Virus record (IMG/VR): IMGVR_UViG_3300007513_000004
Coordinates: 1 to 64,000 of that record
Direction: 5' to 3' (one strand)
Length of the DNA stretch: 64,000 bases
Position numbers and translations under genes: made by a program. The notes under the pieces are model-generated. The model searched no databases, was not told the DNA's origin, and worked only from the letters and a program-made list of their open reading frames with translations. Shown piece by piece: positions 34,343 to 52,430 of this stretch (positions are counted from its first letter, which is position 1; the number at the start of each line of letters is the position of its first letter).

Positions 34343-34358
34343 TGCAAAAACCGTGCCA
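34343..34358 (-). promoter_or_regulatory. sigma54 (-24/-12) consensus site
   Basis: TGGCAC-GGTTT-TTGCA upstream of 34285. Confidence 0.6.
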
Positions 34359-34412
34359 AATAATATTTGAGGACAGTTTGTGGTATTTGTTAAACTTTTG
34401 CCCGGGGATTAT

Positions 34413-34441
34413 TTGATTTCTGTTTTATCATCGACTACTTT
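34413..34441 (+). promoter_or_regulatory. CATC-type promoter (paralogue 2)
   Basis: TTGATT-TCTGTTTTATCATCGAC-TACTTT. Confidence 0.8.
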
Positions 34442-34529
34442 GTATCACAAGGGGTTGAGCCCTTGACCCGCCATCGGGAAGGTGGAGAGCAGCCTCGCTG
34501 GTGTCGGGGCAAACACAAATGGAGTTGTA

Positions 34530-34934
34530 ATGAACATTTTTGGAAATGACAACGAGAGTCCCGCCGCCATTCTTCGTCAGACGATGAGCGTCAGCCTTAC
34601 TGATGACGGTATTCCGGTGGTTTCTTTCGCCACTAACCGTGGCAAGGGTAGCGGTTCGCAGGTGATTCCGGTTGCCGAGTTTTCCGAGTACGTTTCGACG
34701 TTGGAAGACATTTTGGAGTCCGGTATCCCCGAGGATGCTGATGAGGATTTGTCGGCAGGAGAGATGGTGCGTCGTACCATTCGTCAGGATGACGGTGTTA
34801 TCTCCTTCCGCGTGCGTGGAGGAAAGGGTGCAAAGCCCGCCAAGGTCAGCACTGATAACTTCGCAGAAGTTGTCGAGCTTCTTCGGTCCACGGTCGATGC
34901 GGTTGAAGGAGCCTGTGAGTCGCTGACAAAGTAG
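34530..34934 (+). CDS. tandem-repeat protein, paralogue 2 of 3
   Basis: SFATNRGKGSG / SFRVRGGKGAK; GGAG SD. Confidence 0.85.
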   Translation: MNIFGNDNESPAAILRQTMSVSLTDDGIPVVSFATNRGKGSGSQVIPVAEFSEYVSTLEDILESGIPEDADEDLSAGEMVRRTIRQDDGVISFRVRGGKGAKPAKVSTDNFAEVVELLRSTVDAVEGACESLTK

Positions 34935-35069
34935 CGTACACACGCATGCACAATGTACGCACAATGCGTGCGTGTGCGCGAAGTCCCCTCCGCGCAGGGT
35001 AGCGTCGTTAATAGCGGCGCTACCCACTCTTTTAACCTATATGTCAAACTTTTGCCCAGAGGGCAATGG

Positions 35070-35399
35070 TTAGCCAGTCAAAAGATTGATAAAGATATAA
35101 TAATGAAAGATACTTACGGCGAAATAGGCAACAAGTAAAATTCCAATACCCAATTGAGATAACCTGTTGTAAAGAAATTTATTTAATAAATAAATACTTG
35201 GCAAAGATAAAGTTAACTTTGTTATAACAAAGTTAAGCAATGACTTTTCAATTGGGCCGGACAAAACCGGATTAAGTTCTGGAATGTCATAACATGCAAA
35301 CCACACGATAGTCGCAATTAAATCAAACAACACCAGCATCAAAAGTAATTTGGTATGCCGTTGTTTAAAAAAACTTACATATCGCGCATTAGGTGTCAT
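35070..35399 (-). CDS. DUF5658-like membrane protein
   Basis: FDLIAT...ELNPVL...FVITK with TMs. Confidence 0.7.
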   Translation of the reverse strand: MTPNARYVSFFKQRHTKLLLMLVLFDLIATIVWFACYDIPELNPVLSGPIEKSLLNFVITKLTLSLPSIYLLNKFLYNRLSQLGIGILLVAYFAVSIFHYYIFINLLTG

Positions 35400-36047
35400 A
35401 TCACATTACTACCGTTAACTATCCATTTATTCAAACATGTTCCAAACTTCATAAGCCAAACATGTGCCAGCAAGAATCCATAGTGACGATAAAACGCCAG
35501 AGCCAGCAATAATCAATAATGAGTCCATCAAAACCTCCTTCGTCAAGGGCAGTCGTCGCCCTCTAACCCTATGTAGTCGGTGTAAATTTCTTGACAAAAA
35601 ACTTGTAATTACTTTACAAATTGATTTGTAAAACTTTTGCCCAGAACTGGACATTAAAAATCGAATTCTATTTTATCATCGGCTATTTTAGAGTGAAGGA
35701 AAAACGAAGGCAATGCAAAGAGGCAACCAGAATGGCCGTCACGAATCATATCTGATATCCAATTAGTGTTAGAATAGATATATTCAAAGAGCGGGCTGTC
35801 AAGCGGTTACTTTACCGAAAGCGGCGCTACTGTTTAGTCCTTGAGTACCGGGGAAACTCGGTACTCATTTATCTTTATTGTAAATTTTTTGCCCGAAGGG
35901 AAAACCCCGAAGGCACCTAGTACCTTCGGGGTTGAGTTTAATGCCATTGGCATGACCCGCTCACGGGTGAATTATCGGAATGTTTCTGTTTCCAGCCGCT
36001 TGACCCGTTGCAACGGCGCGGCATCTTGTTTATAGTAACCTCCTCGA

Positions 36048-36680
36048 TTAGTGTTTGTGATAGTCGACGTTTGATACCTTGGGGTTCCAACAAGCCCGGC
36101 ACGATCCGCACTTGCCGTCTTGCTTAAGAGCGGGGCAACCATGGCCCATACCCGCATCAATCGTACTCGTAGGCAGGTCGGTGCGCGGCGGCTTGCCACC
36201 TATCATCGTAGCCGATAGCCGGATGACAAGGTTAACGGGCCATGCTGCTACCCGTGCGAACGCTTCCCGGATCATCTTACCTTCACGAGACGGTGCCCAG
36301 AACTCTGCCCATGGTAGGCGTTCGGCTACCTCTACCCACATCAGAACATGATCGACGCTCTGAAAGTCACCGCTATCATGGATACGGAAGTATGGATCGT
36401 CCGGGTTAGTGTAGTGACCGATTAGCTTAACCATACCATCGGTCCATAGTGGATGGGTCAAAGCCTGATAGCGGCGCTCGTGCCCTAACTTGACGTTCGG
36501 GTACATGTAGTTATTTTTCATGGCGTAGCAGTTGCTACAACTTGATCCCTCTATCCCGGCAAGGATACTGCCCAGGATACAGCGTGTTGCACTTAGTGCG
36601 GTGCTGAACCCTGGCATCTTGCTCGGCTTACCTAATCCGCTACGATGCCCGGTTATCTCTTTCGCTTGTTTTAGATTCAT
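36048..36680 (-). CDS. Gp88-like phage protein (Cys cluster, FRxHDSGD)
   Basis: KPSKMPG...CSNCYA...FRIHDSGD...CGSCRACW. Confidence 0.8.
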   Translation of the reverse strand: MNLKQAKEITGHRSGLGKPSKMPGFSTALSATRCILGSILAGIEGSSCSNCYAMKNNYMYPNVKLGHERRYQALTHPLWTDGMVKLIGHYTNPDDPYFRIHDSGDFQSVDHVLMWVEVAERLPWAEFWAPSREGKMIREAFARVAAWPVNLVIRLSATMIGGKPPRTDLPTSTIDAGMGHGCPALKQDGKCGSCRACWNPKVSNVDYHKH

Positions 36681-36929
36681 TGTGTTCCCTTCAATGATTT
36701 GATTTGGTATTGTCAGTATTACCGCCACGTCATCTACTGTCTACAAGTTTTTCAAAAAAGTTTATAATCCCGCTCGGCGCACCCGTCTGGCCCGGTTTAC
36801 ACCGTCGCCCCGTTGATACCGTAGCGGTACTGAATAATATCGGACCCTGCATATTGGGTGAGCATATAATGAAAGGGGTGAGCATTAGCACGTCTGCCCA
36901 CTTACCTGTGACCACCAAACATATTTATA

Positions 36930-37504
36930 TATGTATGATGTACGCACACGGGTGAGTAACACCCTGCACAGGCTTTCTCCCTGTTCTTGTCCTTTGGAGA
37001 CGCTGAACAGCAAGCAATACTTCTGACCGACATTCTGTGCTCAAGTTGGTAAGCTGTACACTTCCCCCGCTTGTTACACGTTATCATTCAACCTCATGGT
37101 AAGGTATCCTAATAACCCCTTTCGGGACGACAAAATCGTTGCCGACTTTGCCAGAGAGACTTCTGCCTTCAGAAGTTAAGTTCTATCAGATTTCTCCGAT
37201 TTACCATGACTCTTTAGTCAGTGCCCTTATCCCGTTTCCACGATGAACCTACAAGTCCGCAGATACCCTCGGCTGCACTTCCACAGTAGTATGTGGACTC
37301 ATGCCTTAGATTACTGAATGATATTCAAGGCCACTACACCTCTTAACTCATTCCCCCTCACAGCCAAGCGGCAGGTCCATATGAATAGCACCCTTCTTGG
37401 GCGGGGTTCTCTCTATCTCCGAAGAGTGCAGGAGCCGGTAACTCCACCTGCATTTAAAGACCCAAGAACGGGGGTCAGTTTAAGTTTTCAAAGAACTTTC
37501 GCTC
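36930..37504 (-). ncRNA. candidate large structured ncRNA (about 560 nt)
   Basis: own promoter, boxA-like leader, more than 12 hairpins including UUCG and GAAA tetraloops, no credible ORF. Confidence 0.7.
37482..37496 (-). promoter_or_regulatory. boxA-like antitermination element
   Basis: GTTCTTTGAAAACTT just downstream of the predicted TSS. Confidence 0.6.
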
Positions 37505-37510
37505 TGTCAT

Positions 37511-37539
37511 AACATAGTTGATGTTAAAACAGAATCCAA
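37511..37539 (-). promoter_or_regulatory. CATC-type promoter driving the large ncRNA
   Basis: TTGGAT-TCTGTTTTAACATCAAC-TATGTT. Confidence 0.75.
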
Positions 37540-37630
37540 AAATTTTCGGGGAAAAGATTTACATAAATGTAAAAGTTTTGCCCCGATGAGTTTATCATAC
37601 GCGTCTGCGCAGATAAACTCAAAGGGAATT

Positions 37631-37825
37631 TTAGAGGTTTTTCCAACTCCAAGGTTCGCCGTCCAGCTTTCGCTGAAGTCGAATTCTGAAGCCCAAAGCC
37701 TTATGCCCCGTCAACGGAGTCAATAACTCAATGGCATACTTGACCTCGTCCTCGGTTGCTTTTCGCAAAAGAGCATCGCGGGCAAAGCCATAAACGAATT
37801 TCCGGTGTTCTGGATTGTCAGGCAT
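37631..37825 (-). CDS. hypothetical protein
   Basis: ORF with GAGGA SD. Confidence 0.7.
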   Translation of the reverse strand: MPDNPEHRKFVYGFARDALLRKATEDEVKYAIELLTPLTGHKALGFRIRLQRKLDGEPWSWKNL

Positions 37826-37887
37826 GTGTGTGTCCTCAAGTTAGGTGGCGAGGGCAGCGGGCGGAAAGTCCACCCGCCGCCTTTGTC

Positions 37888-38328
37888 TTACTCTTCGTCG
37901 GGAGAGCCGCCAGCAAGCTGACTACCCGCGTTCTCGACAGCATCAAGAGTGCTGCGGAGAAGTCCCACGACCTCTGCAAATTCACCGACTGGCATCTTGG
38001 CTGGCTTGGCACCCTTACCGGAACGAACCCGGAAGGAAATCACACCTTCGTCAGACTTGATAGTTCGGCGCACCGTTTCAGCGGCAGAAAGCAACTCTTG
38101 CTCGGCAGTCTCGGGGATGCCATTATCAACGTAGCTTTCCAATGTTTCAACGTAATCCCGATATTCCTCAACAGGAAGAATCTGGGCACCTGAACCCTTG
38201 CCGCGATTCGTGGCAAAGCTGACGACCGCTTGGCCGTCGTCGTCCAGAGAAACAGCCATTGTCTGACGAATCGTCTGGGCCGGAGACTCATTGTGCTCCG
38301 ATGCAAAAATGTTAGTTTTGTCGCTCAT
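37888..38328 (-). CDS. tandem-repeat protein, paralogue 3 of 3
   Basis: SFATNRGKGSG / SFRVRSGKGAK; two CATC promoters upstream (38385-38413, 38452-38480). Confidence 0.85.
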   Translation of the reverse strand: MSDKTNIFASEHNESPAQTIRQTMAVSLDDDGQAVVSFATNRGKGSGAQILPVEEYRDYVETLESYVDNGIPETAEQELLSAAETVRRTIKSDEGVISFRVRSGKGAKPAKMPVGEFAEVVGLLRSTLDAVENAGSQLAGGSPDEE

Positions 38329-38567
38329 TTATTCTACTCCATGCGGCATTTTTGGTTGATAGCTATATTGCTCGCCGCTACTGCGATATAGCCGATGCTA
38401 AAATGAAAATCGAAAATCTCTATCTCTTTCTCTTTCTTCTCTCTCTGCTACAAAGTAGTTGATGTTAAAATCAAATTGAAAAATTGCCAAATGTCAATCT
38501 TTTGCCCCGTCTGTTTTTGAATTCTGTTTTATCATCAGATACATAGAAACATAAGGAGTAAAGCAAT

Positions 38568-38810
38568 ATGTTCATCACAAAAACTTCAATGATTTCTGGC
38601 AGAACCAATACTCTTTGGGTTGAAGGCTTGACCCAGGATATGCTAAAGGCATGGGAAAACGGAGCCTTGATTCAAGACGCCTTGGCAGGAATTCCGCAGG
38701 AATTGCGAGAATTCGTAATGACTGGTGTCTCCCCTGACGAATGGAATAGAACATTCCCGGAAGAGGAAGAAGAGGAATGGGACGAAGATGATAAGAGCCT
38801 TCAGAACTAG
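38568..38810 (+). CDS. conserved-type phage hypothetical protein
   Basis: LIQDAL...REFVMTGV...EW; promoter 38517-38545; AAGGAG SD. Confidence 0.8.
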   Translation: MFITKTSMISGRTNTLWVEGLTQDMLKAWENGALIQDALAGIPQELREFVMTGVSPDEWNRTFPEEEEEEWDEDDKSLQN

Positions 38811-38919
38811 TAAAAGTTTTGCCCAGTGTAGGTTTGCTTCCTGATAAGAAAATATACCGAGAGGGCTGAAAATTTCAACTTTATTTTAGCATCAAATACA
38901 TTTAGACAGGAGAAAAGAA

Positions 38920-39249
38920 ATGGGACTTGACCAATATGGATTTGCCAGAAAAGGCGAAGAACAACTTGATATCGCCTACTGGAGAAAGCATGCCAACCTC
39001 GAAGGCTGGATGGCACGCCTTTATGTTGAAAGAGGTGGGGTAGAGGAAGAGTTCAACTGTACCGAACTACGACTTTTTGCAGATGACCTTTTAGCGTTGG
39101 AACATCAATATCAAAATCTCACCCTTGCTTCTGGCTTCTTTTGGGGAGTCTCGGAAGAGGAAGACGATGCGACGACCAGAGCATTTATTGAAGATGCTAA
39201 ATCGTTGATGGCCGATGGATACGAAATCATTTACACCTCATGGTGGTAG
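38920..39249 (+). CDS. conserved-type phage hypothetical protein
   Basis: MGLDQY...YWRKHANLEGWM...FNC. Confidence 0.8.
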   Translation: MGLDQYGFARKGEEQLDIAYWRKHANLEGWMARLYVERGGVEEEFNCTELRLFADDLLALEHQYQNLTLASGFFWGVSEEEDDATTRAFIEDAKSLMADGYEIIYTSWW

Positions 39250-39258
39250 GAGAATAAA

Positions 39259-39450
39259 ATGGCAAGAGGAATCAACAGGGGCCATCAACGGCGAAGCGAA
39301 ATTGCAGAACGAGTAAAAGTTCTCGCAGAGGAAAGGGCCACGCGCACACCTGCGCAACAACTGGCCTTGCTGGATAAGCGGTTGGGCAAGGACACAGGCG
39401 CACGCAAGGAGCGTGCCAAGTTGACCGCCGAAATAGAATCTAAAAAGTAA
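39259..39450 (+). CDS. small basic protein
   Basis: TPAQQLALLDKRLG...GARKERAKL. Confidence 0.75.
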   Translation: MARGINRGHQRRSEIAERVKVLAEERATRTPAQQLALLDKRLGKDTGARKERAKLTAEIESKK

Positions 39451-39470
39451 ATCTTTTGCCCGGAGCCAGA

Positions 39471-39686
39471 ATGAACATCGAGATTTGTGTCGTGGACGTA
39501 GACGCGGCTTGTTATAATTCGCAAGCCTTGTGTGCTGCCGAGGCACAATTCCCCGGTGGGGCATGGAAGGCTTTTGGTCACCAAGAGGGTACGCCAGCAG
39601 AAAGCACAATTGTGCGTACGCATAGAATTTCGCTCGCTTATGGTCTGCCGAGCTGGGCCTATTGCTACTGGCGGGAGGTAGTTTAA
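39471..39686 (+). CDS. hypothetical protein
   Basis: ORF between two boxes. Confidence 0.55.
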   Translation: MNIEICVVDVDAACYNSQALCAAEAQFPGGAWKAFGHQEGTPAESTIVRTHRISLAYGLPSWAYCYWREVV

Positions 39687-39845
39687 AATTAAAGTTCAGG
39701 CCCAGGAATAATTTAATTTACTTTATTCAATATGTAAAGTTTTTGCACAAGTGCTTATGAATACATAATAATAATGAATATCATAAATAAAGCAATAGAA
39801 GAAAAAGCACCAGTTGCAATTATTACATTACACCATCTGATGAAT

Positions 39846-40136
39846 CTATGTATACTCATTTTCCTGCATCCTAATTTCAGCCATCGGCAGCCACCCGCTC
39901 CATGATTCTTTTTCACCTGGTCGTCCCCACCGAGATAAAGATACATTCTCTTCAAGCGAACGTACGCGTATCCACTTTGCACCACGAGTACAGAACGATG
40001 GTACGGTAGGCTCCTGCAGGATGATAAATCCCGAGCTCCCGTGCTCATGGATTTTATTCCTTGTACGTTGTGATACCTTCTTCCGATCTTGAATCGGAAA
40101 GATATTTATATGGTCGCCTATTTGAAATTCCATCAA
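39846..40136 (-). CDS. hypothetical protein
   Basis: ORF. Confidence 0.65.
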   Translation of the reverse strand: MMEFQIGDHINIFPIQDRKKVSQRTRNKIHEHGSSGFIILQEPTVPSFCTRGAKWIRVRSLEENVSLSRWGRPGEKESWSGWLPMAEIRMQENEYT

Positions 40137-40196
40137 TCACTCGAATCTGTGCTCATTATATTACCACATTCTGCACATTCGCGTATACAAGTTTCA

Positions 40197-40568
40197 TCAT
40201 GCCGGACCACCTTCCGAGCGTCCCTCGATAGGTTGCCGCTCCATCTGAATATCTCCAGAGCAGAGTCCGATGCAAACCTCCAGCATATTCATCCCGAGAG
40301 ATTCTGTATCAACCGGGATGCCCCAATTGCATTCCCGGTCTGGAATCCTCTCAACGAAGATGCCGCTATACTCAACGTTTCCCAAGATGGTAAATGTCGA
40401 CTCATGGCACTTTGGCACCGTAACGGTAACTCGCTCGCCGGATTCATCTTCCTTATCATAAGTAAGGCCGATTCGGGTCATTTGAAGTCTTGACTTTTTA
40501 AAGCCGAGCCTTTTCATGCGGCCAAAAAACTGTCGCCGTGTCATCGGTTTACCTGGGAGTGTTAGCAT
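40197..40568 (-). CDS. hypothetical protein
   Basis: ORF downstream of promoter 40714-40742. Confidence 0.65.
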   Translation of the reverse strand: MLTLPGKPMTRRQFFGRMKRLGFKKSRLQMTRIGLTYDKEDESGERVTVTVPKCHESTFTILGNVEYSGIFVERIPDRECNWGIPVDTESLGMNMLEVCIGLCSGDIQMERQPIEGRSEGGPA

Positions 40569-40792
40569 TTTTCTTTTCCTTTCGTTCAAATTCACGTTCA
40601 AATTCACGCTTGCGACGTTCTTTGATTTGAGCAAGCAGATGCTCCTGCCTGCTCCGGTCTGGCGCGTATACCACTCTAATTCCCCACATTTCCTGCCTCC
40701 ATGCTTACATATGAATGTAAGTGATGATAAAATGAAAATCAAAAATATATGTCAATTTATTGCCCGGAGGGCGGCTATAAGGAAAGCCAGAT

Positions 40793-41122
40793 TCATCGCC
40801 TAATCCTTTTTCGATGTTGAAGCCAAGAAATTCCTTCTTCATCGCAAATATACCTATATGTAGTCTTGGTATAAACCTGTCCAACCTTTATCTTTCCATC
40901 AACATGGTTGCGCCTGCAAGTATGTGTTGATGAGCAAACGAATCGTACCCAGTTGCCATCTTCCCATTCATATCCAGATTCTTGAAGCCAAGGCCTGCTG
41001 GACTCCGCAATAGCACCTTCGTCACAATCACACCCGCCCTCGCTCATGTGATACCGAGTACCACAATAACCACAGTTGGTATAATAGCATCCCCAATCGT
41101 CTGGCACATTATCATAAGACAT
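40793..41122 (-). CDS. Cys-rich hypothetical protein
   Basis: ORF with GGAG SD. Confidence 0.7.
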   Translation of the reverse strand: MSYDNVPDDWGCYYTNCGYCGTRYHMSEGGCDCDEGAIAESSRPWLQESGYEWEDGNWVRFVCSSTHTCRRNHVDGKIKVGQVYTKTTYRYICDEEGISWLQHRKRIRR

Positions 41123-41132
41123 CTTTACTCTC

Positions 41133-41708: not shown

Positions 41709-41795
41709 GGTTTTCTCCCTTGTTACAAAGTAACTGATGGAAAAATGAAAATGAAAAAAGGCGCAAAACTTTTGCCCAACAATTTAAAAGCAAGC

Positions 41796-44993: not shown

Positions 44994-45010
44994 CCGGGGC
45001 TTTGCCCCGG
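44994..45010 (+). terminator. intrinsic terminator
   Basis: CCGGGGC-TTT-GCCCCGG followed by a T-rich tail. Confidence 0.7.
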
Positions 45011-45049
45011 GCCTTTCTTTATCTTAAATGTCAAACTTTTGCCCGAGGG

Positions 45050-45992: not shown

Positions 45993-46101
45993 TCTGCCTC
46001 CTGTTATATGGTAACCGATGGATAAATAGAAATCAAAAAGAAATGTAAAAGTTTTGCCCGGGCTTATTTCAAATCTGTTTGAGCATCGGTTACTTTACGA
46101 T

Positions 46102-46395
46102 ATGGAAAAGAACATTCAGACTTTGGTGGAGTTGTGGCGGGATGCCGAGGCCAGGAAGTTGGAGGCCGACCGTAACGAGTTTGGTGCCAAGATGGAGGTT
46201 CGACGGGCTTTGTCCAAGTCTCTTGGAAGCTACACTGAACCGGGAACCAGTGGCGTTGGAATCTGCGCTGCGGCCATCGATATTGGTCATTGGGCCTGTG
46301 AAACGAGCCCTGTCGCGGTCTGCGTCTATGATGATTGGTCCGACCCGATTCATGACAACTGCCTTTACTGCAACAACCCAGAGGAACGAAAATGA
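46102..46395 (+). CDS. hypothetical protein with C-terminal Cys/His motif (probably leaderless mRNA)
   Basis: promoter 46068-46096, ATG 5 nt after the -10; C..SP..VCVYD..DP.HD.CL.C..PEERK. Confidence 0.7.
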   Translation: MEKNIQTLVELWRDAEARKLEADRNEFGAKMEVRRALSKSLGSYTEPGTSGVGICAAAIDIGHWACETSPVAVCVYDDWSDPIHDNCLYCNNPEERK

Positions 46396-46679
46396 CTTGG
46401 AAAGCCTTTCTTAAATCAAAACTGCGCGAGCGGTCCATCAGTAATCAGACAGTATATATTTCTGTCTTTGTAGCATTCTTCGCCGGGTGGGTCGTGGGAT
46501 AGGCATTTTAATGCCAATAATAAAAACTAAATTATTTACGTCCCCGCCAGCCAATCGTGGGACTGCTCCTTCCAAATTACGAACGCGAATTATAAAATCC
46601 TTTAGCGCAAACCGCCGGGCAAAAAGTTGACATTTATAATAAAAAGAGGCTGCCGAGGCAGCCTCGATATTTAGGCAAT

Positions 46680-47129
46680 TTAGCAACCGTATCGGCGCTC
46701 CATCGCAACCTCCGCTTCGTATTCGGCCTCCCACCGTGCTCGTTCTTCCAAGTCCTGTAGAACCTTCCGATTATTATCGGAGAGCCTATCCTCGTCAACG
46801 ACTGGCGAAACTCGCTTGCCGCCACATTCGTAGCAGGTCACGTCATAGCTTCCAGAAAAATAGTCCCGCTCGAAATCCGGGTCATCATAGAAGTCATCGG
46901 AGGTCAATCCGTTGCAATCGATGGAAGGATTGACGTGGGAGCCTCGACCGGAGCAGGTGGCGCACACCTCAAACTTTACGGGCAGCAGCTCAAAGAATTC
47001 CTCGCCATCCTCATCCTCAATGGCGACTTGAACCATCATCTGGCTCTCGTCAAAGGAATTATACCAAGTGCCACGGCGGGCCGCTCGGGTGCGGGGGTCG
47101 TTGTAATAGTTGTAATCATCGATGGACAT
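46680..47129 (-). CDS. phage protein with DnaJ-like CxxCxGxG motifs
   Basis: CATCSGRG, CYECGG; promoter 47152-47180. Confidence 0.8.
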   Translation of the reverse strand: MSIDDYNYYNDPRTRAARRGTWYNSFDESQMMVQVAIEDEDGEEFFELLPVKFEVCATCSGRGSHVNPSIDCNGLTSDDFYDDPDFERDYFSGSYDVTCYECGGKRVSPVVDEDRLSDNNRKVLQDLEERARWEAEYEAEVAMERRYGC

Positions 47130-47222
47130 TAGACACTCCTCTGTGTATGGATGAGTAAACGATGGAAAAACAAAGTTGAAATAAGCATGTGCAAATCTTT
47201 TGCCCAGAGTAATATTTATCTT

Positions 47223-47363
47223 ATGAAGTGGTTAGATGACATAAAACAGAAACTATGGTGGAGAGGAATTACTGGCAAGGATCTTGCAGTACTTACGCTC
47301 ATGCCCGTATCTTTCGTAGCAATTATATTGTTTTTAATTTGGGGGCTGGCGCAAGGTATGTAA
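47223..47363 (+). CDS. small membrane protein
   Basis: TM ORF between two boxes. Confidence 0.5.
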   Translation: MKWLDDIKQKLWWRGITGKDLAVLTLMPVSFVAIILFLIWGLAQGM

Positions 47364-47378
47364 ATATTTTGCCCGGCG

Positions 47379-47582
47379 TTATAATAAATAAACAAGGCTG
47401 GCGACTAAAACAACACCAGCAGAGAATATTGCCATTGGAACATAGGCTCCAGCGGTGAACGAAAGTGTTGCGCCCGCAGCAGATATCATAAAGGCAAAGT
47501 ACATAACTATAGCTATCAACTCCCCAATATGTTCTGGAACGCCCATTGCCCAGCTTCTATATTTTGCAATTAAGTTATTCAT
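47379..47582 (-). CDS. small two-TM membrane protein
   Basis: hydrophobic ORF between boxes. Confidence 0.65.
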   Translation of the reverse strand: MNNLIAKYRSWAMGVPEHIGELIAIVMYFAFMISAAGATLSFTAGAYVPMAIFSAGVVLVASLVYLL

Positions 47583-47641
47583 TTAACGATGATACTCCGG
47601 GCAAAAAATTGACACAAAGGTTGAACCAAAAGGCTCTCAGT

Positions 47642-47857
47642 CTAAAAGTCATCCCGAGAAACCTTCTTGCGGCAAGCCTTCTTGCTCTGCTCCTTACGAG
47701 CATCACCGTGAGAGCCGGAACCGTTCCGAAGAATCAGTCCAAGCATATCAAGGTTGCGAGTCTTACGTCGCTTACCCTCTCCGCGCATGGTGGCGCGAAG
47801 TTCCCGCTCCTCACGGCGGGCATTACGCTTGCGGTTCTTTCGTGCTGTCTTGGCCAT
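47642..47857 (-). CDS. small Arg/Lys-rich protein
   Basis: GGAGG SD; promoter 47877-47905. Confidence 0.75.
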   Translation of the reverse strand: MAKTARKNRKRNARREERELRATMRGEGKRRKTRNLDMLGLILRNGSGSHGDARKEQSKKACRKKVSRDDF

Positions 47858-47933
47858 GATAGCCTCCTTCTGTCTCTATGTAACCGATGGAGAAATAGAA
47901 ATCAAAAATGTGTTGTAAAACTTTTGCCCAGGC

Positions 47934-48368
47934 TCACCGTCTAATTTTTACATTAGGTATGTCAGCAATCCGGTCAGCCAGTAAATCTCGACCATCAGGA
48001 CAAGAGCGATTCAACATAGTCAGTATAGACTGAATCTCAACCCAAAGCTGTTCTGGGAGCACAAGACAGGAGTATCCAAGATAAACCTTGACCCAATCCT
48101 CTCCCAAGCTACGAAAGGCGCAATCGGATGCAGCGTAAAGATGCTCCGGCTTTACCGAGAAGATTGCGCCCTTTACTGTAAATTCGATGGGTTCCGTATC
48201 AGTAAAGGCAAAGCCACCAGGGTCGAGGTGGGCAACATCAATAGCGGTTTTTTCCTCTGGAGTAACACTATATCGTTCAGCTATGTCATCCTCACACACG
48301 CTCGTACCAACGAGTGAAATGTGCAAACGAATTTTGGAATCTGCGGGGTAACGGATTGACTCAAGCAT
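47934..48368 (-). CDS. hypothetical protein
   Basis: GGAGG SD; promoter 48384-48412. Confidence 0.75.
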   Translation of the reverse strand: MLESIRYPADSKIRLHISLVGTSVCEDDIAERYSVTPEEKTAIDVAHLDPGGFAFTDTEPIEFTVKGAIFSVKPEHLYAASDCAFRSLGEDWVKVYLGYSCLVLPEQLWVEIQSILTMLNRSCPDGRDLLADRIADIPNVKIRR

Positions 48369-48515
48369 ACTTCCTCCTGTGTGTATGTATGTGATGATAA
48401 AATAATACTGGAAAAGTCTGGGGAAAAGATTGACATACGTGTGAATGTTTTGCCCAAATGGGAGTGGGCCCGGTGGAATTACCCCAATTCCACCGGGCGG
48501 CGTGTGCCCATCACC

Positions 48516-48986
48516 TCACACGCCCTCTCGCTCCCAAGGGGGACGCGGGTTACCATTTCTCCAATCATGCTCCCAACGCTCACGCATGTTAGAGATACCC
48601 GTAGCATCAACCCCGTGCTGATTGCGAGTTGCCAACTCCTCATCTGTGCAGCCTCCATCATAAAGAGAGACTACCGAAACCTCGTATCCATGTTCCTCTG
48701 CCATACGCAAGTACGGCTCCATTTCCCATCGCTGGGTAAAAGTATTGTGAACCACCACGGTCGCTGCCAGTCGATTCCTCATGGAATTTTCGGCCTGCTC
48801 CTGACACCAAAAGTGTGCAGCGGGCAGCTTTCGAGGGTTAAAATTGTAAATTCCATCCTCATCAAGAAAGAAATCATCAGCGGCAAAGAAGCACTTGCCA
48901 AGCGGTGCGCCTACGTTCAGTAGCATCCGACCAAGCCTTGTCTTTCCTGAACCGGAAATTCCGCGAACCAAAATAAGTCTATACAT
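48516..48986 (-). CDS. P-loop kinase/NTPase (AAA_33, N4BP2-like)
   Basis: LVRGISGSGKT, AADDFF, AHFWCQ, VVHNTFT..WE..PY. Confidence 0.88.
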   Translation of the reverse strand: MYRLILVRGISGSGKTRLGRMLLNVGAPLGKCFFAADDFFLDEDGIYNFNPRKLPAAHFWCQEQAENSMRNRLAATVVVHNTFTQRWEMEPYLRMAEEHGYEVSVVSLYDGGCTDEELATRNQHGVDATGISNMRERWEHDWRNGNPRPPWEREGV

Positions 48987-49067
48987 GCGTGTCCTCGTTG
49001 GGCAAAAAATTGTCATACTTCTCCCTTGGAGGCCCCCGGCACAATGCCGGGGAACCTCGGGAGGCGG

Positions 49068-49511
49068 CTACTTCTTGACGGCTGCTCCATCAAACTTGAC
49101 GTAGCCTTTGGTAGCAATCCGGGGAAGGTTATCGACAATCTCCGAATCAAACATATCGAGCATCGTCCGATACTTGACCTGCTCATCGGCGGTCAACGAG
49201 CTAACCCGCTTCTCCATCGCAGCTTTGGTCAGACCGGAAAGCCGATTCCAAAGTTCGATAATGTGGTCCGGCGCATACTCTCGCGTGCATCCAAGCTCTT
49301 GAAGGAGCATACAGATAGTCGGAACCGACCGTGCGCGGTTTGTGCCTGCGCGTGTACTGGATGGTCCTCGGGAGAGGACACCTTCCACCTCGGCGGTGAA
49401 CTTGACATGCACATCCGACTCGGGTACAAGCACGGATTCGTCGTTGCAGGATTGAAGGTTGATAACTTTGGCGAGGGCCAACTGTTCGATGGGCGAAAGG
49501 GTCTGGGACAT
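49068..49511 (-). CDS. hypothetical protein
   Basis: AGGAG SD; promoter 49559-49587. Confidence 0.75.
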   Translation of the reverse strand: MSQTLSPIEQLALAKVINLQSCNDESVLVPESDVHVKFTAEVEGVLSRGPSSTRAGTNRARSVPTICMLLQELGCTREYAPDHIIELWNRLSGLTKAAMEKRVSSLTADEQVKYRTMLDMFDSEIVDNLPRIATKGYVKFDGAAVKK

Positions 49512-49640
49512 TGATTGTCTCTCCTAAAGAGGGTGGGTTTGTCTCCCTCTTACATCATAATGTAGCCGATGATAAAACAGAATCGAAAAATGAAATGTTA
49601 AAGTTTTGCCCAGCGGTCTGCAATAATCATGCCAAAAAGT

Positions 49641-49674
49641 TGGCACAGTTCTTGCATTAGCAAGAAGCATGCCA
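49641..49674. promoter_or_regulatory. head-to-head pair of sigma54 consensus sites
   Basis: TGGCAC-AGTTC-TTGCA (+), TGGCAT-GCTTC-TTGCT (-). Confidence 0.7.
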
Positions 49675-49752
49675 GTTAATTAAGTTAAAGTTTTGCCCGA
49701 TTAAATAAATAATTAACTTAATCTGGGCAAAAAGTTGACATTTAAAACAAAT

Positions 49753-50021
49753 AAAAAGAAGGGGGGCAAAGGCCCCTCTGGGTAGCGCGGCTTGTGTGCA
49801 AAACAGCAGCAGGGGAGCTTGCTCTTTGAGAGGTGTGTGGTTCGCGACCCGAACAAATCTCGTGACATCCCTTGGCTTTTCAGTTTGCCTTGCCTTCCCA
49901 GAGGGGCATAGCTGCTCATTACTTTACCGGGGGTCTATCCTGTACCCCGAACAGTTACACGGTATGAGTCAACCGTGCGGTGTATAACTAGTATTCCACC
50001 GTTTCTGAATCTCTCTCCTTG
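49753..50021 (-). ncRNA. candidate 270-nt structured RNA
   Basis: promoter 50028-50056, multiple stems, terminal hairpin plus U-tract, no credible ORF. Confidence 0.55.
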
Positions 50022-50093
50022 TGTTCTAAAGTAATTGATGCAAAAATCGAAATGAAAAACATATTTGCAAAGTTTTTGCCCATACGTAAGGCT

Positions 50094-50127
50094 TGGCACA
50101 CTTTTTGCTAATGCAAGAAACATGCCA
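50094..50127. promoter_or_regulatory. head-to-head pair of sigma54 consensus sites
   Basis: TGGCAC-ACTTT-TTGCT (+), TGGCAT-GTTTC-TTGCA (-). Confidence 0.7.
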
Positions 50128-50181
50128 ACAAACATGTCAATGTTTTGCCCTTGGGCAAAAGTTTGACACAAAGCATAAAAG

Positions 50182-50205
50182 AAGGCCGGGCATATGCCCG
50201 GCCTT
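50182..50205 (-). terminator. intrinsic terminator of ardC
   Basis: AAGGCCGGGC stem followed by CTTTT on the minus strand. Confidence 0.75.
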
Positions 50206-50234
50206 GCGTATGGCCCCACTCGGGGCGTCTGGCC

Positions 50235-51176
50235 CTACTTGCGCTGGCCCTCCCCCTTGTCGATGAGGTAGCGCATGACCTTGCCCGCTTCATTCGCGGC
50301 CCGCTGAATCACGGTAGGGTCATCCTTGAGAGCCTTCCGCCAGTTGGCAAGGTAGGCCACATGGTTGTCCATCAAACCCTCTCGCTTGACTCCCAGATAG
50401 GCGCATGTGAACGCCGCGCCAATCTCGGCAACCAACTCCTCGTAAGCATACGCCTCCGAGCCGAAGCCCGTGAACTTGACGATGCCATCCCGGTTGAGTC
50501 GGTCCTTTGCACCTGACCAGTGGGCGTGCTCATGGATGGTAGTGGCCCAAAAATCAGCAACAGTGGTGAAGGCTCCGGCCTCGGGCACCATGATGTAGTC
50601 CTCGCGAGGGGAGTAGAAAGCACGCCCGCCGCCCGTGCGGAAATCCGCGTCGATACCTTTGACAAGTGCAGCCGCCGCCTCATGGCCCACCTTTGGGTCA
50701 ACCTCTGAAATCTCGGCAGACGGTAGGGGGTTCGTCGTTTGCTGGTTGTTGAAAGTGTACGAGCTTCCAAATCCGATGAACTTTGTGGACCCCTTGACCA
50801 AGAGACTCGCGCCACAGGGCTTGCACTTTTTTGCAAATCCACATGGGCGGCCACAACTGTTGCAGGCCAGCTTCGGGAAGAAAATAGGAGTCCCCTTCTC
50901 GCCTTTGCGCACGTAGTTGCCGCTCTTTTGCCACTGGCCAAACCCGGCCCAACGGTTGTCACCAAACTGAACCCCGGCCATCATCAGCATAAAGCCATTG
51001 AAGTTTCCGCCGTAGGCGCGGCCCGTCAGGATGTTGATTGGCATCCCACCAGCAAGGGACCTATCCCACGGCATAATCCAAGGGGTGCCGTCCTCGGGCG
51101 GGTTGTCGAGGGCTTCGATAATCTGCGCGGCTATACGCTCGCACGTCTCTTGAATCTTGTCGTTGGGCTTGCTCAT
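50235..51176 (-). CDS. ardC: ArdC-family antirestriction / ssDNA-binding protein with an inserted Zn-ribbon
   Basis: WIMPW, N..TGR.Y.G.N, VRKGEKG, RAFYSP..D.I, HEHAHW, YAYEELVAEIGAAF; promoter 51225-51253. Confidence 0.9.
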   Translation of the reverse strand: MSKPNDKIQETCERIAAQIIEALDNPPEDGTPWIMPWDRSLAGGMPINILTGRAYGGNFNGFMLMMAGVQFGDNRWAGFGQWQKSGNYVRKGEKGTPIFFPKLACNSCGRPCGFAKKCKPCGASLLVKGSTKFIGFGSSYTFNNQQTTNPLPSAEISEVDPKVGHEAAAALVKGIDADFRTGGGRAFYSPREDYIMVPEAGAFTTVADFWATTIHEHAHWSGAKDRLNRDGIVKFTGFGSEAYAYEELVAEIGAAFTCAYLGVKREGLMDNHVAYLANWRKALKDDPTVIQRAANEAGKVMRYLIDKGEGQRK

Positions 51177-51432
51177 GGTGGTCCTCCGGGGACTAAAGCG
51201 GGTATTGACGGGGGCTTACATACATGAGTAACCGATGCTCAAATAGAAATGAAAAAACCAATTGCCAATCTTTTGCCCAGACAGGTGTGCTTCTTTATGC
51301 AAAAACCATGCCAACCCAATTGACAAAGTTTTGCCCAGACTCAGACGCATTTCCTTGCAAGAACCATGCCAATGTGTATGAAAATGTTTTGCCCAAATGT
51401 AAAAACATATTTTACAAAACCTCGACAGAGGT

Positions 51433-51466
51433 TGGCATGGTTCTTGCTAATGCAAGAACTGTGCCA
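51433..51466. promoter_or_regulatory. head-to-head pair of sigma54 consensus sites
   Basis: TGGCAT-GGTTC-TTGCT (+), TGGCAC-AGTTC-TTGCA (-). Confidence 0.7.
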
Positions 51467-51567
51467 TATGTTATGCAAATGTTTTGCCCAATGCTTTGGG
51501 CAAAAAAATGACATGTGTACGAAAATACACACGTCTTTACATTTTCTTTACATCGGACAAAAGAAAA

Positions 51568-51595
51568 CCCCTCACCGCCTTTCGGCGGTGAGGGG
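51568..51595 (-). terminator. intrinsic terminator
   Basis: 12-bp stem CCCCTCACCGCC-GAAA-GGCGGTGAGGGG plus TTTTCTTTT. Confidence 0.88.
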
Positions 51596-51623
51596 GTAGG
51601 AGGTTAGCCCCGCCCCGGCCCTA

Positions 51624-52322
51624 CTATGCGTAGGGGATGGGGAGGGGGGAGGAGGCGTCAAACTCGACCCAATCGGCGTCCAGCCACATGTCGGCGGGGA
51701 CGTGCCGCCACTCGATGCGAACTCGGCGGTAGCGGCCAGCGTAGGCACCGGAGCCGAAGGGACGGAGCCAGCACACGGGCTTGCCTTTCGGGGTGGTCAG
51801 GTCCTGACCCTCGGCCCAGACCTTGCTGGCATCGGCGCGGCGCATCATCAGCACCCCGTCAATCTCGGTCAGGAGGCAGACGTAAACCGGGACACCAGCA
51901 TCGACGGCGGCAAGGAAGGCGGCCAGCGGGGTTCCGGCCTTGGCACAGTCGGCCTCAGCATCCCAGACGCCGCTGGTCAGGTCGCGATTCCCGTAGGGGT
52001 CGCCGGTGCTTCCCTTGAAGTTGACCGGGACCATTTCGACAATCGCCGGGTAGGGGTGGCCCGCGAGCGACGGGTGAACCACGGGCCACACGTCATCAAA
52101 GAGGCCCAGACCCCGGCCACGCTGCAAGGGGCGGCCCAATCGGTCCAGGTCGCCATTCTGCGCGACACCATCCCGGCACGGAGGGACCGCGACACCAGCC
52201 GCTTCCATCCAATATGCGACGTGCTTGTACCCGTCGCCCACTCCGGCACCCATTCCGCCCGCTTCCGCGAGGCGGCAGCCGCCCTCAATCTCAAGTCCGT
52301 TTCTGTCGTTCTTCTTAGTCAT
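51624..52322 (-). CDS. hypothetical protein, very GC-rich
   Basis: GGAGG SD; promoter 52339-52367; terminator downstream. Confidence 0.8.
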   Translation of the reverse strand: MTKKNDRNGLEIEGGCRLAEAGGMGAGVGDGYKHVAYWMEAAGVAVPPCRDGVAQNGDLDRLGRPLQRGRGLGLFDDVWPVVHPSLAGHPYPAIVEMVPVNFKGSTGDPYGNRDLTSGVWDAEADCAKAGTPLAAFLAAVDAGVPVYVCLLTEIDGVLMMRRADASKVWAEGQDLTTPKGKPVCWLRPFGSGAYAGRYRRVRIEWRHVPADMWLDADWVEFDASSPLPIPYA

Positions 52323-52395
52323 AGTGACCTCCTACACATAGGTAAGTGATGCTCAAACAGAAATGAAAAACTATTGCCCAAACAAAACGAAAGGT

Positions 52396-52430
52396 TGGCA
52401 CGCGTCTTGCTATATGCACAAAGCATGCCA
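52396..52430. promoter_or_regulatory. head-to-head pair of sigma54-like sites (one mismatch)
   Basis: TGGCAC-GCGTC-TTGCT (+), TGGCAT-GCTTT-GTGCA (-). Confidence 0.6.

What the first reader, a model, noticed from the sequence alone, without database searches (positions are those of the whole stretch)
34343..52430. Head-to-head pairs of consensus sigma54 sites in intergenic DNA
Seen: five palindromes TGGCAY-N5-TTGCW-(AA/TT)-WGCAA-N5-RTGCCA at 41796, 49641, 50094, 51433 and 52396 (last with one mismatch and 1 nt longer), plus singles at 34343, 51298 and 51356, nearly always next to a polar box. Known: TGGCAC-N5-TTGC is the RpoN -24/-12 element; sigma54 holoenzyme binds stably but stays closed without an enhancer-binding ATPase. 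Convergent pairs 2 bp apart cannot both fire. Inference: decoys that trap sigma54-RNAP, roadblocks, or an RNAP-anchored DNA-entry aid; implies an RpoN-reliant host. Alternatively the dyad is an operator for a dimeric phage protein.
Basis: partly seen in the sequence, partly recalled or inferred. Interest (0 to 1): 0.75.

Follow-up and report, generated by a model that had tools for sequence, protein, structure and literature searches.

The report
Face-to-face sigma54 promoter pairs in phages
A marine giant phage carries perfect copies of the bacterial sigma54 promoter signal, several as mirror-image pairs. The same paired signal recurs in about 50 unrelated uncultured phage lineages and is almost absent from bacteria. 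None of the checked phages encodes the activator such promoters need, so how they are used is an open question that can be tested.

Summary
The window holds 13 exact TGGCAY-N5-TTGCW sites where 0.29 are expected. They are the only ones in the 223-kb phage record. All lie in a high-GC island of small, terminator-bounded genes on the minus strand (34.3-52.4 kb). These genes include ArdC-like and SprT-like proteins. Four sites pairs form perfect 34-bp head-to-head pairs and one forms an imperfect 35-bp pair. All single sites point the same way as the genes.

The same pair occurs in about 127 IMG/VR stretches, which fall into about 50 DNA-similarity groups with GC 0.32-0.65. It occurs in only 9 stretches in 596 Gb of bacterial genomes. 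A control pattern with N6 spacers gives 0 hits.

- In those loci the N5 spacer is exact (579 sites, against 1-8 for other spacers).
- Positions not fixed by the search follow the sigma54 consensus.
- The two arms are less alike than chance, so a hairpin is not what is conserved.
- The sites cluster in one control region per genome, often between diverging gene blocks.
- Single sites lie 43-57 nt upstream of ribosome-binding site and start codon in an HMO-2011-type phage. Its cultured relatives lack the motif.
- No phage examined encodes sigma54 or an enhancer-binding ATPase.

Best reading (confidence 0.5): these are host sigma54-RNA polymerase promoter elements. A pair is two mutually exclusive promoters facing each other. 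The main rivals are silent polymerase docking and a binding protein other than sigma54. The host, actual sigma54 binding and transcription start sites were not tested.

The parts
34343..34358 (-). Single sigma54-type site (TTGGCACGG-N-TTGCAT). It lies 57 nt upstream of the GTG start of a minus-strand ORF (34025-34285), which has a GGAGG ribosome-binding site. It sits at the left edge of the high-GC island.
39403..39418 (-). Weaker site (TGGCAC-N5-TTGCG). A box lies 43 nt upstream. Its status is uncertain.
41796..41829 (.). Perfect 34-bp head-to-head pair (plus arm TGGCAT, minus arm TGGCAC). It lies between the terminator and box of the upstream gene and the box, leader block and SD of the SprT-like gene.
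41133..41708 (-). SprT-like metalloprotease gene downstream of the 41796 pair.
49619..49634 (-). It is followed by box, leader block and the 147-aa ORF at 49068-49511.
49641..49674 (.). Perfect 34-bp head-to-head pair (plus arm C, minus arm T).
50094..50127 (.). Perfect 34-bp head-to-head pair. An inverted box pair (50135-50168) and the ArdC terminator (50182-50205) lie upstream in the minus-strand sense. The predicted minus-arm start is near 50101.
50235..51176 (-). ArdC-like anti-restriction gene (ArdcN domain plus zincin metallopeptidase domain). One pair and two singles lie upstream of it.
51298..51313 (-). Single site in a box-site unit that repeats every 58 bp.
51356..51371 (-). Single site, second 58-bp unit.
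51433..51466 (.). Perfect 34-bp head-to-head pair. It is the most upstream sigma54-type element of the ArdC control region.
52396..52430 (.). Imperfect 35-bp pair (the minus arm has GTGC in place of TTGC, and the centre is 5 bp). It sits at the right edge of the island, upstream of the 232-aa ORF at 51624-52322.
51263..51489 (-). Four 'polar boxes' (GGGCAAAA-N2-TTnnCA, at 51263, 51321, 51379 and 51474). Three are each followed after 15 nt by a sigma54-type site. The last is followed by the conserved leader block CATCGGTTAC (51228-51237).
34300..52450 (-). High-GC island (0.44-0.55, against 0.39 for the genome). It consists of small cassettes, each bounded by a terminator, and holds every sigma54-type site of the genome. 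The island is conserved in the related 88-kb contig G022.

Best explanation
The elements are binding sites for the host's sigma54 (RpoN) RNA polymerase holoenzyme, and they serve as promoters.

In this phage they are added to a subset of the small early or anti-defence gene cassettes. These are the 232-aa ORF, the ArdC-like gene, the 49.7-50.0 kb unit, the 147-aa ORF, the SprT-like gene and the 86-aa ORF. The single sites and the minus arms of the pairs drive these minus-strand genes.

A head-to-head pair is two full promoters whose -12 elements face each other across a 4-bp A/T core. One holoenzyme can dock in either orientation, but two cannot dock at once. The pair therefore works as a compact two-way promoter in which the two directions exclude each other. 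It marks the upstream boundary of a control region.

Firing must depend on an enhancer-binding ATPase supplied by the host, because the phage encodes none.

Shown here:
- identity of the motif, its enrichment and its exact spacing;
- orientation and placement relative to genes;
- recurrence across phage lineages;
- no selection for a hairpin;
- no phage-encoded sigma54 or activator.

Inferred, not shown:
- that sigma54 holoenzyme binds;
- that transcription starts about 11 nt downstream of the GC;
- that the two arms exclude each other;
- what the activator is.
For: - Chance is excluded: 13 sites against 0.29 expected, all inside one 18-kb island. The pair pattern gives 118 stretches in IMG/VR (about 127 by extrapolation), 0 for the N6-spacer control and 9 in 596 Gb of bacterial genomes.
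- In the fetched loci, 579 sites have the N5 spacer against 1-8 for N2-N4 and N6-N9. About 263 of the 579 lie outside the pairs that were used to select the loci.
- Free positions of 177 unique singles follow the sigma54 consensus: T before TGGCA in 73%, G or A after TGGCAY in 90%, and A or T after TTGC in 90% (consensus as given in PMC12316311).
- All singles in the window are on the coding strand. Site 34343 is followed by a 57-nt leader with GGAGG and a GTG start.
- In other phages, 67 of 94 intergenic singles point the same way as the next gene. In the HMO-2011-type contig L071, four singles lie just upstream of successive genes of the rightward block next to the control region. For three of them the distance to SD-ATG was measured at 43-57 nt.
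- Cultured relatives lack the motif: HMO-2011 and CRP-1 (TerL 84-85% identical) and pelagiphages HTVC115P and HTVC103P. The pelagiphages carry a sigma70 consensus promoter at the equivalent place. HMO-2011 carries what reads by eye as a sigma70-like promoter.
- In six genomes fetched whole (five rated 100% complete), nearly all sites sit in one non-coding control region. By crude ORF calls this lies where the terminase-bearing block and the opposite block diverge. Pair clusters are flanked by diverging genes in 37% of cases, against 12.7% for all neighbouring gene pairs.
- No sigma70 consensus promoters above chance occur in 49.4-52.7 kb.
- One RNA-library contig (49925-50075) reaches upstream of the box hexamer. 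This fits a start at or above the minus arm of the 50094 pair. The evidence is weak.
- Six of seven bacterial assemblies that hold such a pair encode sigma54. Also weak.
Against: - No enhancer-binding ATPase (PF00158) and no sigma54 DNA-binding domain (PF04552) is found in this record or in 50 motif-bearing records, 12 of them at least 90% complete. Genes that must be expressed early would then depend on a host activator being active at infection, and no enhancer sequence was identified.
- In this window the plus arms of the pairs face no gene. They point only at the upstream terminator.
- Some phages carry dense arrays that look unlike normal promoters: a 26-bp period in G044, and 52-54-bp periods in L045 and L054.
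- Several of these control regions also contain good sigma70 promoters.
- The C/T ratio after TGGCA is about 50:50. From memory, characterised sigma54 promoters show a much stronger preference for C.
- The host is unknown, and no binding or start-site data exist.
Confidence: 0.5

Rival explanations
1. Silent docking. Sigma54 holoenzyme binds but is not meant to fire. The closed complex would occlude or insulate the neighbouring box promoter, mark cassette boundaries, or soak up host sigma54 polymerase as the phage genome replicates.
For: - No activator is encoded by the phages.
- Dense tandem arrays occur in G044, L045 and L054.
- The sites coexist with sigma70 promoters.
- In the window, each minus-strand site begins 7 nt after a TTGACA-like box hexamer, so a bound complex would overlap anything bound at the box.
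- Published work shows sigma54 holoenzyme occupies its sites in an inactive state whatever the condition, and can repress a promoter it overlaps (PMC4591121).
Against: - The same paper found no roadblock effect of bound sigma54 polymerase in E. coli.
- An overlapping pair holds only one polymerase and so halves the capacity of a sponge.
- Singles show gene-directed orientation (z about 4.1, from the counts) and promoter-like distance to SD-ATG where no other promoter is evident.
- Only about 6 of about 25 cassette boundaries in the island carry sites.
Confidence: 0.2
2. The motif is bound by some protein other than sigma54. This could be a phage regulator that binds as a dimer to pairs and as a monomer to singles, or an unidentified host factor. 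The likeness to the -24/-12 consensus would then be mimicry or coincidence.
For: - The pairs have dyad symmetry.
- The pairs are almost confined to viral sequence: about 127 stretches in IMG/VR against 9 in the bacterial genomes.
- They sit in phage control regions alongside other repeated, operator-like motifs.
- The C/T ratio after TGGCA is atypical.
Against: - The half-site is a 16-bp two-part element that often stands alone (177 unique singles). It shows sigma54-like preferences at free positions and exact N5 spacing.
- The same motif is used across about 50 DNA-similarity groups with GC 0.32-0.65.
- Complete motif-bearing genomes share no protein family other than terminase and one family of long proteins (550-900 aa, not identified) at BLAST sensitivity.
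- The only family shared with this window's island, GP88, is present in HMO-2011, which lacks the motif. It is absent from 9 of 12 near-complete carriers.
- No sigma54 DNA-binding domain is encoded by the phages.
Confidence: 0.15
3. The pairs act as nucleic-acid structures: an RNA hairpin (terminator, processing or stability element) or a DNA cruciform or single-strand hairpin promoter. The last would resemble the Frpo elements found ahead of anti-restriction genes on conjugative plasmids.
For: - In this window the pairs would fold as RNA at -12 to -24 kcal/mol, with z-scores of -1.9 to -7.9.
- ArdC-type genes are typical of plasmid leading regions (my own knowledge).
Against: - Across 112 unique pairs, the arms are less alike at the six variable positions than shuffled partners are (1.71 against 1.93 identical positions).
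- Position 6 differs between the two arms (C in one, T in the other) in 83 of 112 pairs, where 56 are expected. All 5 pairs in the window show this. Complementarity is therefore avoided, not kept.
- The better-folding strand varies from site to site.
- No U-tract follows the pairs.
- Singles cannot form the structure.
Confidence: 0.05
4. The pairs are packaging (pac or cos, small-terminase) signals or replication-origin signals.
For: - In 63 of 118 loci the pairs lie upstream of the small terminase, large terminase and portal module.
- 31% of pair clusters lie at locus or contig edges.
- Some are arranged in iteron-like arrays.
Against: - Phages with 84-85% identical large terminase (HMO-2011, CRP-1) lack the motif.
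- Different terminase families carry the identical motif.
- In this window the sites are spread over 18 kb of small-gene cassettes. A scan of the whole record with one terminase family (PF03237) found no terminase.
- Singles sit directly upstream of the first genes of the rightward block in L071.
Confidence: 0.05

Closest known systems
Canonical sigma54 (RpoN) -24/-12 promoters, such as glnAp2, nifH and pspA
   Same: The TGGCAC-N5-TTGCW sequence and exact spacing, the flanking preferences, and the position upstream of and co-oriented with genes.
   Different: - Known examples are single sites paired with an upstream enhancer and a cognate AAA+ activator. Here no activator or enhancer is identified.
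- The sites are in phage genomes.
- Many are fused head-to-head with a second site. That arrangement is almost absent from 596 Gb of bacterial genomes.
Transcriptionally inactive, often intragenic, sigma54 holoenzyme binding sites in E. coli (Bonocora et al. 2015, PMC4591121)
   Same: Consensus-like sites with no evident activator, and polymerase expected to sit in a closed complex.
   Different: - Those sites are single, mostly inside genes, and on the chromosome.
- These are intergenic, clustered, paired, and specific to phages.
Bidirectional sigma70 promoters that arise from symmetry of the -10 element (Warman et al. 2021; recalled from memory, not checked here)
   Same: One short symmetric sequence serves transcription in both directions. 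These pairs are enriched between diverging genes.
   Different: - Those are back-to-back, so the two transcripts diverge.
- Here the two promoters face each other, and each predicted start lies inside the partner's -24 region. The two transcripts would share about 20 complementary nucleotides at their 5' ends.
PeSL mobile regulatory cassettes of T4-type phages (Arbiol et al. 2010, PMC2839356; listed, content recalled from memory)
   Same: A repeated promoter-plus-stem-loop module flanks small accessory ORFs in a variable region. In this window the equivalent is terminator, box, leader block and gene.
   Different: - PeSL uses sigma70-type early promoters.
- Here a subset of cassettes also carries sigma54-type sites.
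Frpo-type single-strand hairpin promoters in plasmid leading regions (Masai and Arai 1997; from memory)
   Same: A palindromic promoter-like sequence ahead of anti-restriction genes such as ArdC.
   Different: - Frpo depends on hairpin pairing that rebuilds sigma70 -35 and -10 elements.
- Here pairing between the arms is selected against, and the consensus is that of sigma54.

Membership tests
sigma54-dependent promoter | Conserved GG and GC doublets within TGGCAC-N5-TTGCW, with fixed spacing | tested here: met
   13 exact sites. In related loci, 579 sites have N5 against 8 or fewer for any other spacer. Flanking preferences match the consensus (PMC12316311).
sigma54-dependent promoter | Lies upstream of, and points the same way as, a transcription unit, at a promoter-like distance | tested here: met
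   Met for all singles and minus arms in the window and for singles in L071, L007 and L001. Not met for the plus arms of the pairs in this window, which face only a terminator.
sigma54-dependent promoter | The host encodes sigma54 (rpoN) | not testable with these tools
   The host of this marine phage is unknown. Indirect evidence only: 6 of 7 bacterial assemblies holding such a pair have a Sigma54_DBD gene.
sigma54-dependent promoter | A cognate AAA+ enhancer-binding activator and an upstream enhancer | tested here: inconclusive
   No PF00158 match over its cut-off in this record or in 50 motif-bearing records. A host activator cannot be examined. No enhancer motif was identified, although inverted box pairs lie just upstream of three of the pairs.
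sigma54-dependent promoter | Holoenzyme binding, and a transcription start 10-13 nt downstream of the GC | not testable with these tools
   Only assembled RNA contigs were available, with no read ends. One piece, 49925-50075, is compatible with such a start but does not prove it.
Operator of a dimeric phage regulator | A symmetric site whose half-sites work only in pairs, with a co-distributed DNA-binding protein gene | tested here: not met
   177 unique lone half-sites. The arms are asymmetric outside the sigma54 contact bases. No shared regulator family was found. Sensitivity is limited to BLAST and Pfam.
Intrinsic terminator or structured RNA hairpin | Stem pairing kept by compensatory changes, and a U-tract | tested here: not met
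   Arm identity is 1.71 against 1.93 for shuffled partners, and position 6 differs between arms in 83 of 112 pairs. No U-tract follows the pairs. No Rfam match at gathering threshold anywhere in the window apart from tRNAs and tmRNA.
pac/cos (small-terminase) recognition site | Co-varies with the terminase and lies next to it | tested here: not met
   The motif is absent from HMO-2011 and CRP-1 despite 84-85% identical TerL. The same motif occurs with different terminase families. In the window the sites are spread over 18 kb of small-gene cassettes, and a PF03237 scan of the record found no terminase.

The most novel reading that the evidence does not exclude
A set of unrelated, mostly uncultured aquatic phages has converged on using the host's sigma54 polymerase through a phage-specific 'twin' site. 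They do this without encoding any known activator. That would imply one of two things. Either sigma54 closed complexes can be fired, or made use of, by a route that does not need a phage-encoded or enhancer-bound AAA+ protein. Examples would be an unrecognised phage activator or a trigger coupled to infection. Or the twin site is a purpose-built device for capturing sigma54 polymerase during takeover of the host.
Probability: 0.25. Interest if true: 0.9.

Novelty: new variant of a known kind. Interest (0 to 1): 0.75.

Why it matters
Sigma54 transcription is regarded as a tightly gated cellular system. I know of no phage shown to rely on it. Eight full-text searches found no description of paired sigma54 sites or of sigma54 promoter sets in phages.

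If these sites are used, they would do three things:
- give a sequence signature that ties uncultured phages to hosts carrying rpoN;
- show that related phages swap promoter classes as they change host;
- raise a sharp mechanistic question about what activates sigma54 polymerase on a phage that encodes no activator.

The 34-bp twin site is short and defined, and can be tested directly by gel shift, footprinting and reporter assays.

Tried and rejected
- **Chance or composition:** rejected by shuffles and by the N6-spacer control.
- **Phage-encoded sigma54 or activator:** searched for and not found.
- **GP88 as the common factor:** rejected.
- **Hairpin function:** rejected on arm statistics, even though the pairs in this window would fold stably.
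- **Packaging signal:** rejected by comparison with HMO-2011, CRP-1 and the pelagiphages.
- **The box as a standard sigma70 promoter:** no -10 element at a workable distance was found by eye, and the consensus scan was at chance level. The box remains unexplained.
- **Leptospira matches in the bacterial scan:** these are a different 200-bp repeat whose centre is mostly not A/T.
- **Host inference:** failed. A 745-aa window protein had no match in the phage collection. Atlas look-ups of the ArdC-like and 232-aa proteins were uninformative. A single-protein scan for ArdC relatives in viral contigs found none.
- **RNA evidence:** only sparse assembled contigs were available, so no start sites could be read.
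- **Limits of method:** my gene calls in foreign loci are crude (longest-ORF tiling), so orientation and flank statistics are approximate. The loci were selected by the pair pattern, so only the singles, the free positions and the genome-wide placement count as independent evidence.

Full report
**What the window is.**
The window is the first 64 kb of a 223,402-bp IMG/VR virus record. The record is linear, estimated 67% complete, and has GC 0.39. It comes from marine metagenomes. It encodes a tmRNA and nine tRNAs in the window. Elsewhere it encodes a PrkA-type kinase, a tubulin/FtsZ-domain protein, a UvsW-like helicase and a ribonucleotide reductase. It is therefore an uncultured large phage. 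No cultured relative was found.

**The observation.**
- TGGCAY-N5-TTGCW occurs 13 times in the window, against 0.29 expected. It occurs nowhere else in the 223 kb.
- Four 34-bp head-to-head pairs are exact. A fifth, at 52396-52430, is 35 bp long with one mismatch in its -12 element.
- Every single is on the minus strand, which is the coding strand of the surrounding genes.
- All sites lie in a compositional island at 34.3-52.45 kb, with GC 0.44-0.55. The outermost sites sit at the island's two edges.

**Local anatomy.**
The island is a row of small genes, each ending in a minus-strand terminator. Read on the minus strand, a control region runs in this order:
1. terminator;
2. often an inverted pair of 'polar boxes' (GGGCAAAA-N2-TTnACA);
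3. head-to-head pair;
4. zero to two units of box plus single site (58-bp period upstream of the ArdC-like gene);
5. a final box;
6. a conserved leader block (CATCGGTTAC type);
7. Shine-Dalgarno sequence and ATG.

The box starts 23-24 nt upstream of the TGGCA of six minus-strand sites. About 33 boxes occur in 25-52 kb, but only six control regions carry sigma54-type sites. Those six lie upstream of:
- a 232-aa ORF;
- an ArdC-like anti-restriction gene;
- a 0.3-kb unit without a convincing ORF;
- a 147-aa ORF;
- a SprT-like protease gene;
- an 86-aa ORF.

Site 34343 has no box between it and its gene. It reads as a textbook sigma54 promoter with a 57-nt leader. No sigma70 consensus promoters exceed chance in 49.4-52.7 kb.

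**A relative.**
An 88-kb contig (G022, 65-72% nucleotide identity in core genes) has the same high-GC island. That island holds 10 exact half-sites, several degenerate pairs and 43 boxes. Sites again lie upstream of its ArdC homologue, but in a different arrangement. The presence of sites is conserved while their layout turns over.

**The same pair elsewhere.**
- A sub-pattern scan recovered 27 of its 29 hits from that set, so the total is near 127.
- The loci fall into about 50 DNA-similarity groups with GC 0.32-0.65.
- The same pattern with N6 spacers finds nothing.
- In 596 Gb of bacterial and archaeal genomes it finds 9 stretches. Some of these are a different Leptospira repeat.
- The paired form is therefore rare, recurrent and essentially viral.

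**Is it the sigma54 signal?**
- In the fetched loci the half-site core occurs 579 times with an N5 spacer, and 1-8 times with any other spacer from N2 to N9. About 263 of the 579 lie outside the pairs used for selection, where about 4 are expected.
- In 177 unique singles the positions not fixed by the search prefer T before TGGCA (73%), a purine after TGGCAY (90%) and A or T after TTGC (90%). This is the published consensus (PMC12316311).
- The gap between the TTGC and GCAA cores of a pair is 4 bp in 158 cases, 3 bp in 7, 5 bp in 5 and 6 bp in 2. In the 112 unique exact pairs all four central bases are A or T, but the search pattern itself required that.

**Not a hairpin.**
- Across 112 unique pairs, the two arms agree at fewer of the six variable positions than randomly re-paired arms do (1.71 against 1.93).
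- The base after TGGCA is C in one arm and T in the other in 83 of 112 pairs, where 56 are expected. All five pairs in the window show this.
- Pairing between the arms is therefore avoided, while the protein-contact bases are kept.
- The pairs in this window would still fold as RNA at -12 to -24 kcal/mol. However, the better-folding strand is inconsistent and no U-tract follows.

**Where the sites sit in other phages.**
- In 63 of 118 loci the pair lies upstream of a large-terminase gene, never downstream. Small-terminase-like and portal genes flank it in 32 and 28 loci.
- In six genomes fetched whole (five rated 100% complete), nearly all sites fall in one non-coding region. By crude ORF calls this region lies where the gene block carrying the terminase and the opposite block diverge. 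In four of the six, the opposite block carries a 550-900-aa protein family that I did not identify.
- Pair clusters are flanked by diverging genes in 37% of cases, against 12.7% for all neighbouring gene pairs. 31% lie at locus or contig edges.
- Arrays occur: three or four pairs at 52-54-bp spacing in L045, L062, L117 and L054. G044 has four plus-strand sites facing six or more minus-strand sites at a 26-bp period.

**Evidence that singles act as promoters.**
- Of 94 intergenic singles that have a downstream gene, 67 point the same way as that gene.
- L071 belongs to the HMO-2011-type podoviruses; the TerL of the sister contig L061 is 84-85% identical to those of HMO-2011 and CRP-1. In L071 one pair heads the rightward gene block. 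Four co-directional singles follow, and three of them were measured at 43-57 nt upstream of SD-ATG of successive genes. The leaders of two of them carry a conserved palindrome.
- The cultured relatives HMO-2011 and CRP-1 have none of these sites. At equivalent places HMO-2011 has what reads by eye as a sigma70-like promoter, and a different leader palindrome.
- G005 carries a pair, while pelagiphages HTVC115P and HTVC103P (TerL 64-66% identical) instead have TTGACA-N17-TATAAT upstream of their small-terminase gene.
- Related phages thus differ in promoter class at the same positions. This argues that the motif is a promoter tuned to the host, and not part of the packaging or replication machinery.

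**What is missing.**
- Neither this record nor 50 motif-bearing records, 12 of them at least 90% complete, encode a sigma54 DNA-binding domain or a sigma54-type AAA+ activator.
- Complete carriers share only terminase and one family of long, unidentified proteins at BLAST sensitivity.
- The one family this island shares with other carriers, GP88, does not track the motif.
- The reader of the motif is therefore most simply a host protein, and the universal -24/-12 consensus points to sigma54.
- Six of seven bacterial assemblies that hold a pair encode sigma54. This is weak support.

**RNA data.**
Only assembled contigs from marine RNA libraries were available. They cover 49.70-50.08 kb in four libraries, and parts of the ArdC-like gene. 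One piece ends at 50075, upstream of the box hexamer. That fits initiation at or above the minus arm of the 50094 pair (predicted start near 50101), or read-through from upstream. DNA carry-over cannot be excluded. No start sites can be read from these data.

**Mechanism.**
I take the half-site to be a sigma54 holoenzyme docking site that serves as a promoter.

In a pair, the GC of each -12 element lies 6 bp from its partner's. Each predicted start falls inside the partner's -24 region. From memory, published closed-complex footprints span about -34 to -5. On that basis the two footprints would overlap by about 10 bp, so only one holoenzyme should dock at a time. This is inference.

The pair would then be a two-way promoter in which the two directions exclude each other. 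That suits diverging gene blocks. In this window's one-way cassettes, the plus arm could give only a short antisense transcript ending at the upstream terminator.

The activator is the weak point of this reading. It must come from the host or be of an unrecognised kind.

The main rival is silent docking: occlusion of the overlapping box, insulation, or titration of sigma54. It is favoured by the missing activator, the dense arrays and the coexisting sigma70 promoters. It is weakened by three points:
- E. coli evidence against roadblocking (PMC4591121);
- the low capacity of overlapping sites as a sponge;
- the promoter-like placement of singles.

**Novelty.**
Eight full-text searches found no description of paired sigma54 sites, or of phages that use sets of sigma54 promoters. 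The half-site is a known kind of element. The face-to-face fusion, its restriction to phages and the absence of any activator are new.

Noticed in passing
window 25,800-52,000, for example 50066-50081, 50135-50168 and 51263-51489; also contig G022 at 58-82 kb: The 'polar box' GGGCAAAA-N2-TTnACA occurs about 33 times here, almost always on the minus strand, and 43 times in the relative G022. Three arrangements are seen. Sometimes it is followed after 38-43 nt by a lineage-specific leader block (CATCGGTTAC here, CCACTATATCTA in G022) and then a ribosome-binding site. Sometimes a terminator hairpin follows it directly. Sometimes two boxes form an inverted pair. No sigma70 -10 element fits. What binds the box is unknown.
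   Followed up: partly
window 34,300-52,450: This is a high-GC island (0.44-0.55, against 0.39 for the genome) of terminator-bounded cassettes. It holds ArdC-like, SprT-like, AAA_33 (polynucleotide-kinase-like) and metallophosphoesterase genes. It also holds tRNA-Lys(UUU) and tRNA-Leu(UAA) on the opposite strand (44455-44629). It looks like an anti-defence and tRNA-repair module. The island is conserved in G022.
   Followed up: partly
window 49,700-50,080: The unit downstream of the 50094 pair has a leader block and SD-like sequence but no convincing ORF. The only candidate is a 68-aa ORF that runs through the terminator. Yet it is the part of the region most often recovered in RNA libraries (4 runs). 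Its predicted fold is not unusual (z -1.3), and there is no Rfam match at gathering threshold.
   Followed up: partly
window 52471-52488: TTGGCACGGCGCGTGCCA lies just outside the island, 41 nt from the 52396 pair. It is two -24 boxes placed head-to-head with no -12 elements.
   Followed up: no
112 unique pairs from loci L001-L127 plus the window: The base after TGGCA is C in one arm and T in the other far more often than chance would give (83 of 112, 56 expected). The C arm shows no consistent orientation relative to the terminase gene. This could reflect avoidance of perfect palindromes, or one strong and one weak promoter in each pair.
   Followed up: partly
G044 (loci L138 and L140), 56,981-57,271 and 1-127: Four plus-strand sigma54-type sites (39-44-bp spacing) face six or more identical minus-strand sites at a 26-bp period. 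Each array would have to be read through by transcription from the other. The contig's 127-bp 'terminal repeat' lies inside this array and may be an assembly artefact.
   Followed up: partly
L071 3,700-5,300 and HMO-2011 (loci L150, L151): Leaders of the genes next to the control region carry a lineage-specific palindrome just before the ribosome-binding site. In two L071 leaders it is CTTACCAAGTTGGTAA. In HMO-2011 it is AGTCCGACAGCGGACT, repeated in several leaders. The function is unknown; it could be an operator or an RNA stem.
   Followed up: no
L119 and L125 (Leptospira yanagawae contigs): A repeated element of about 200 bp, with long-range inverted repeats, contains a sequence that matches the pair. 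Its centre is mostly not A/T (GGAA, GAAC, CTTC, and TTAA in two copies). It appears unrelated to the phage motif.
   Followed up: partly
window 1878-2227; window 10,790-28,932: The phage encodes a tmRNA (tag ANNNYYYEPVALAA) and seven minus-strand tRNAs (Gly, Pro, Thr, Asn, Met, Lys, Arg).
   Followed up: no
G000 133,545-135,464 and 141,964-144,438 (outside the window): A full-length PrkA-type AAA kinase, and an 824-aa protein that joins a glycosyltransferase domain to a tubulin/FtsZ GTPase domain.
   Followed up: no
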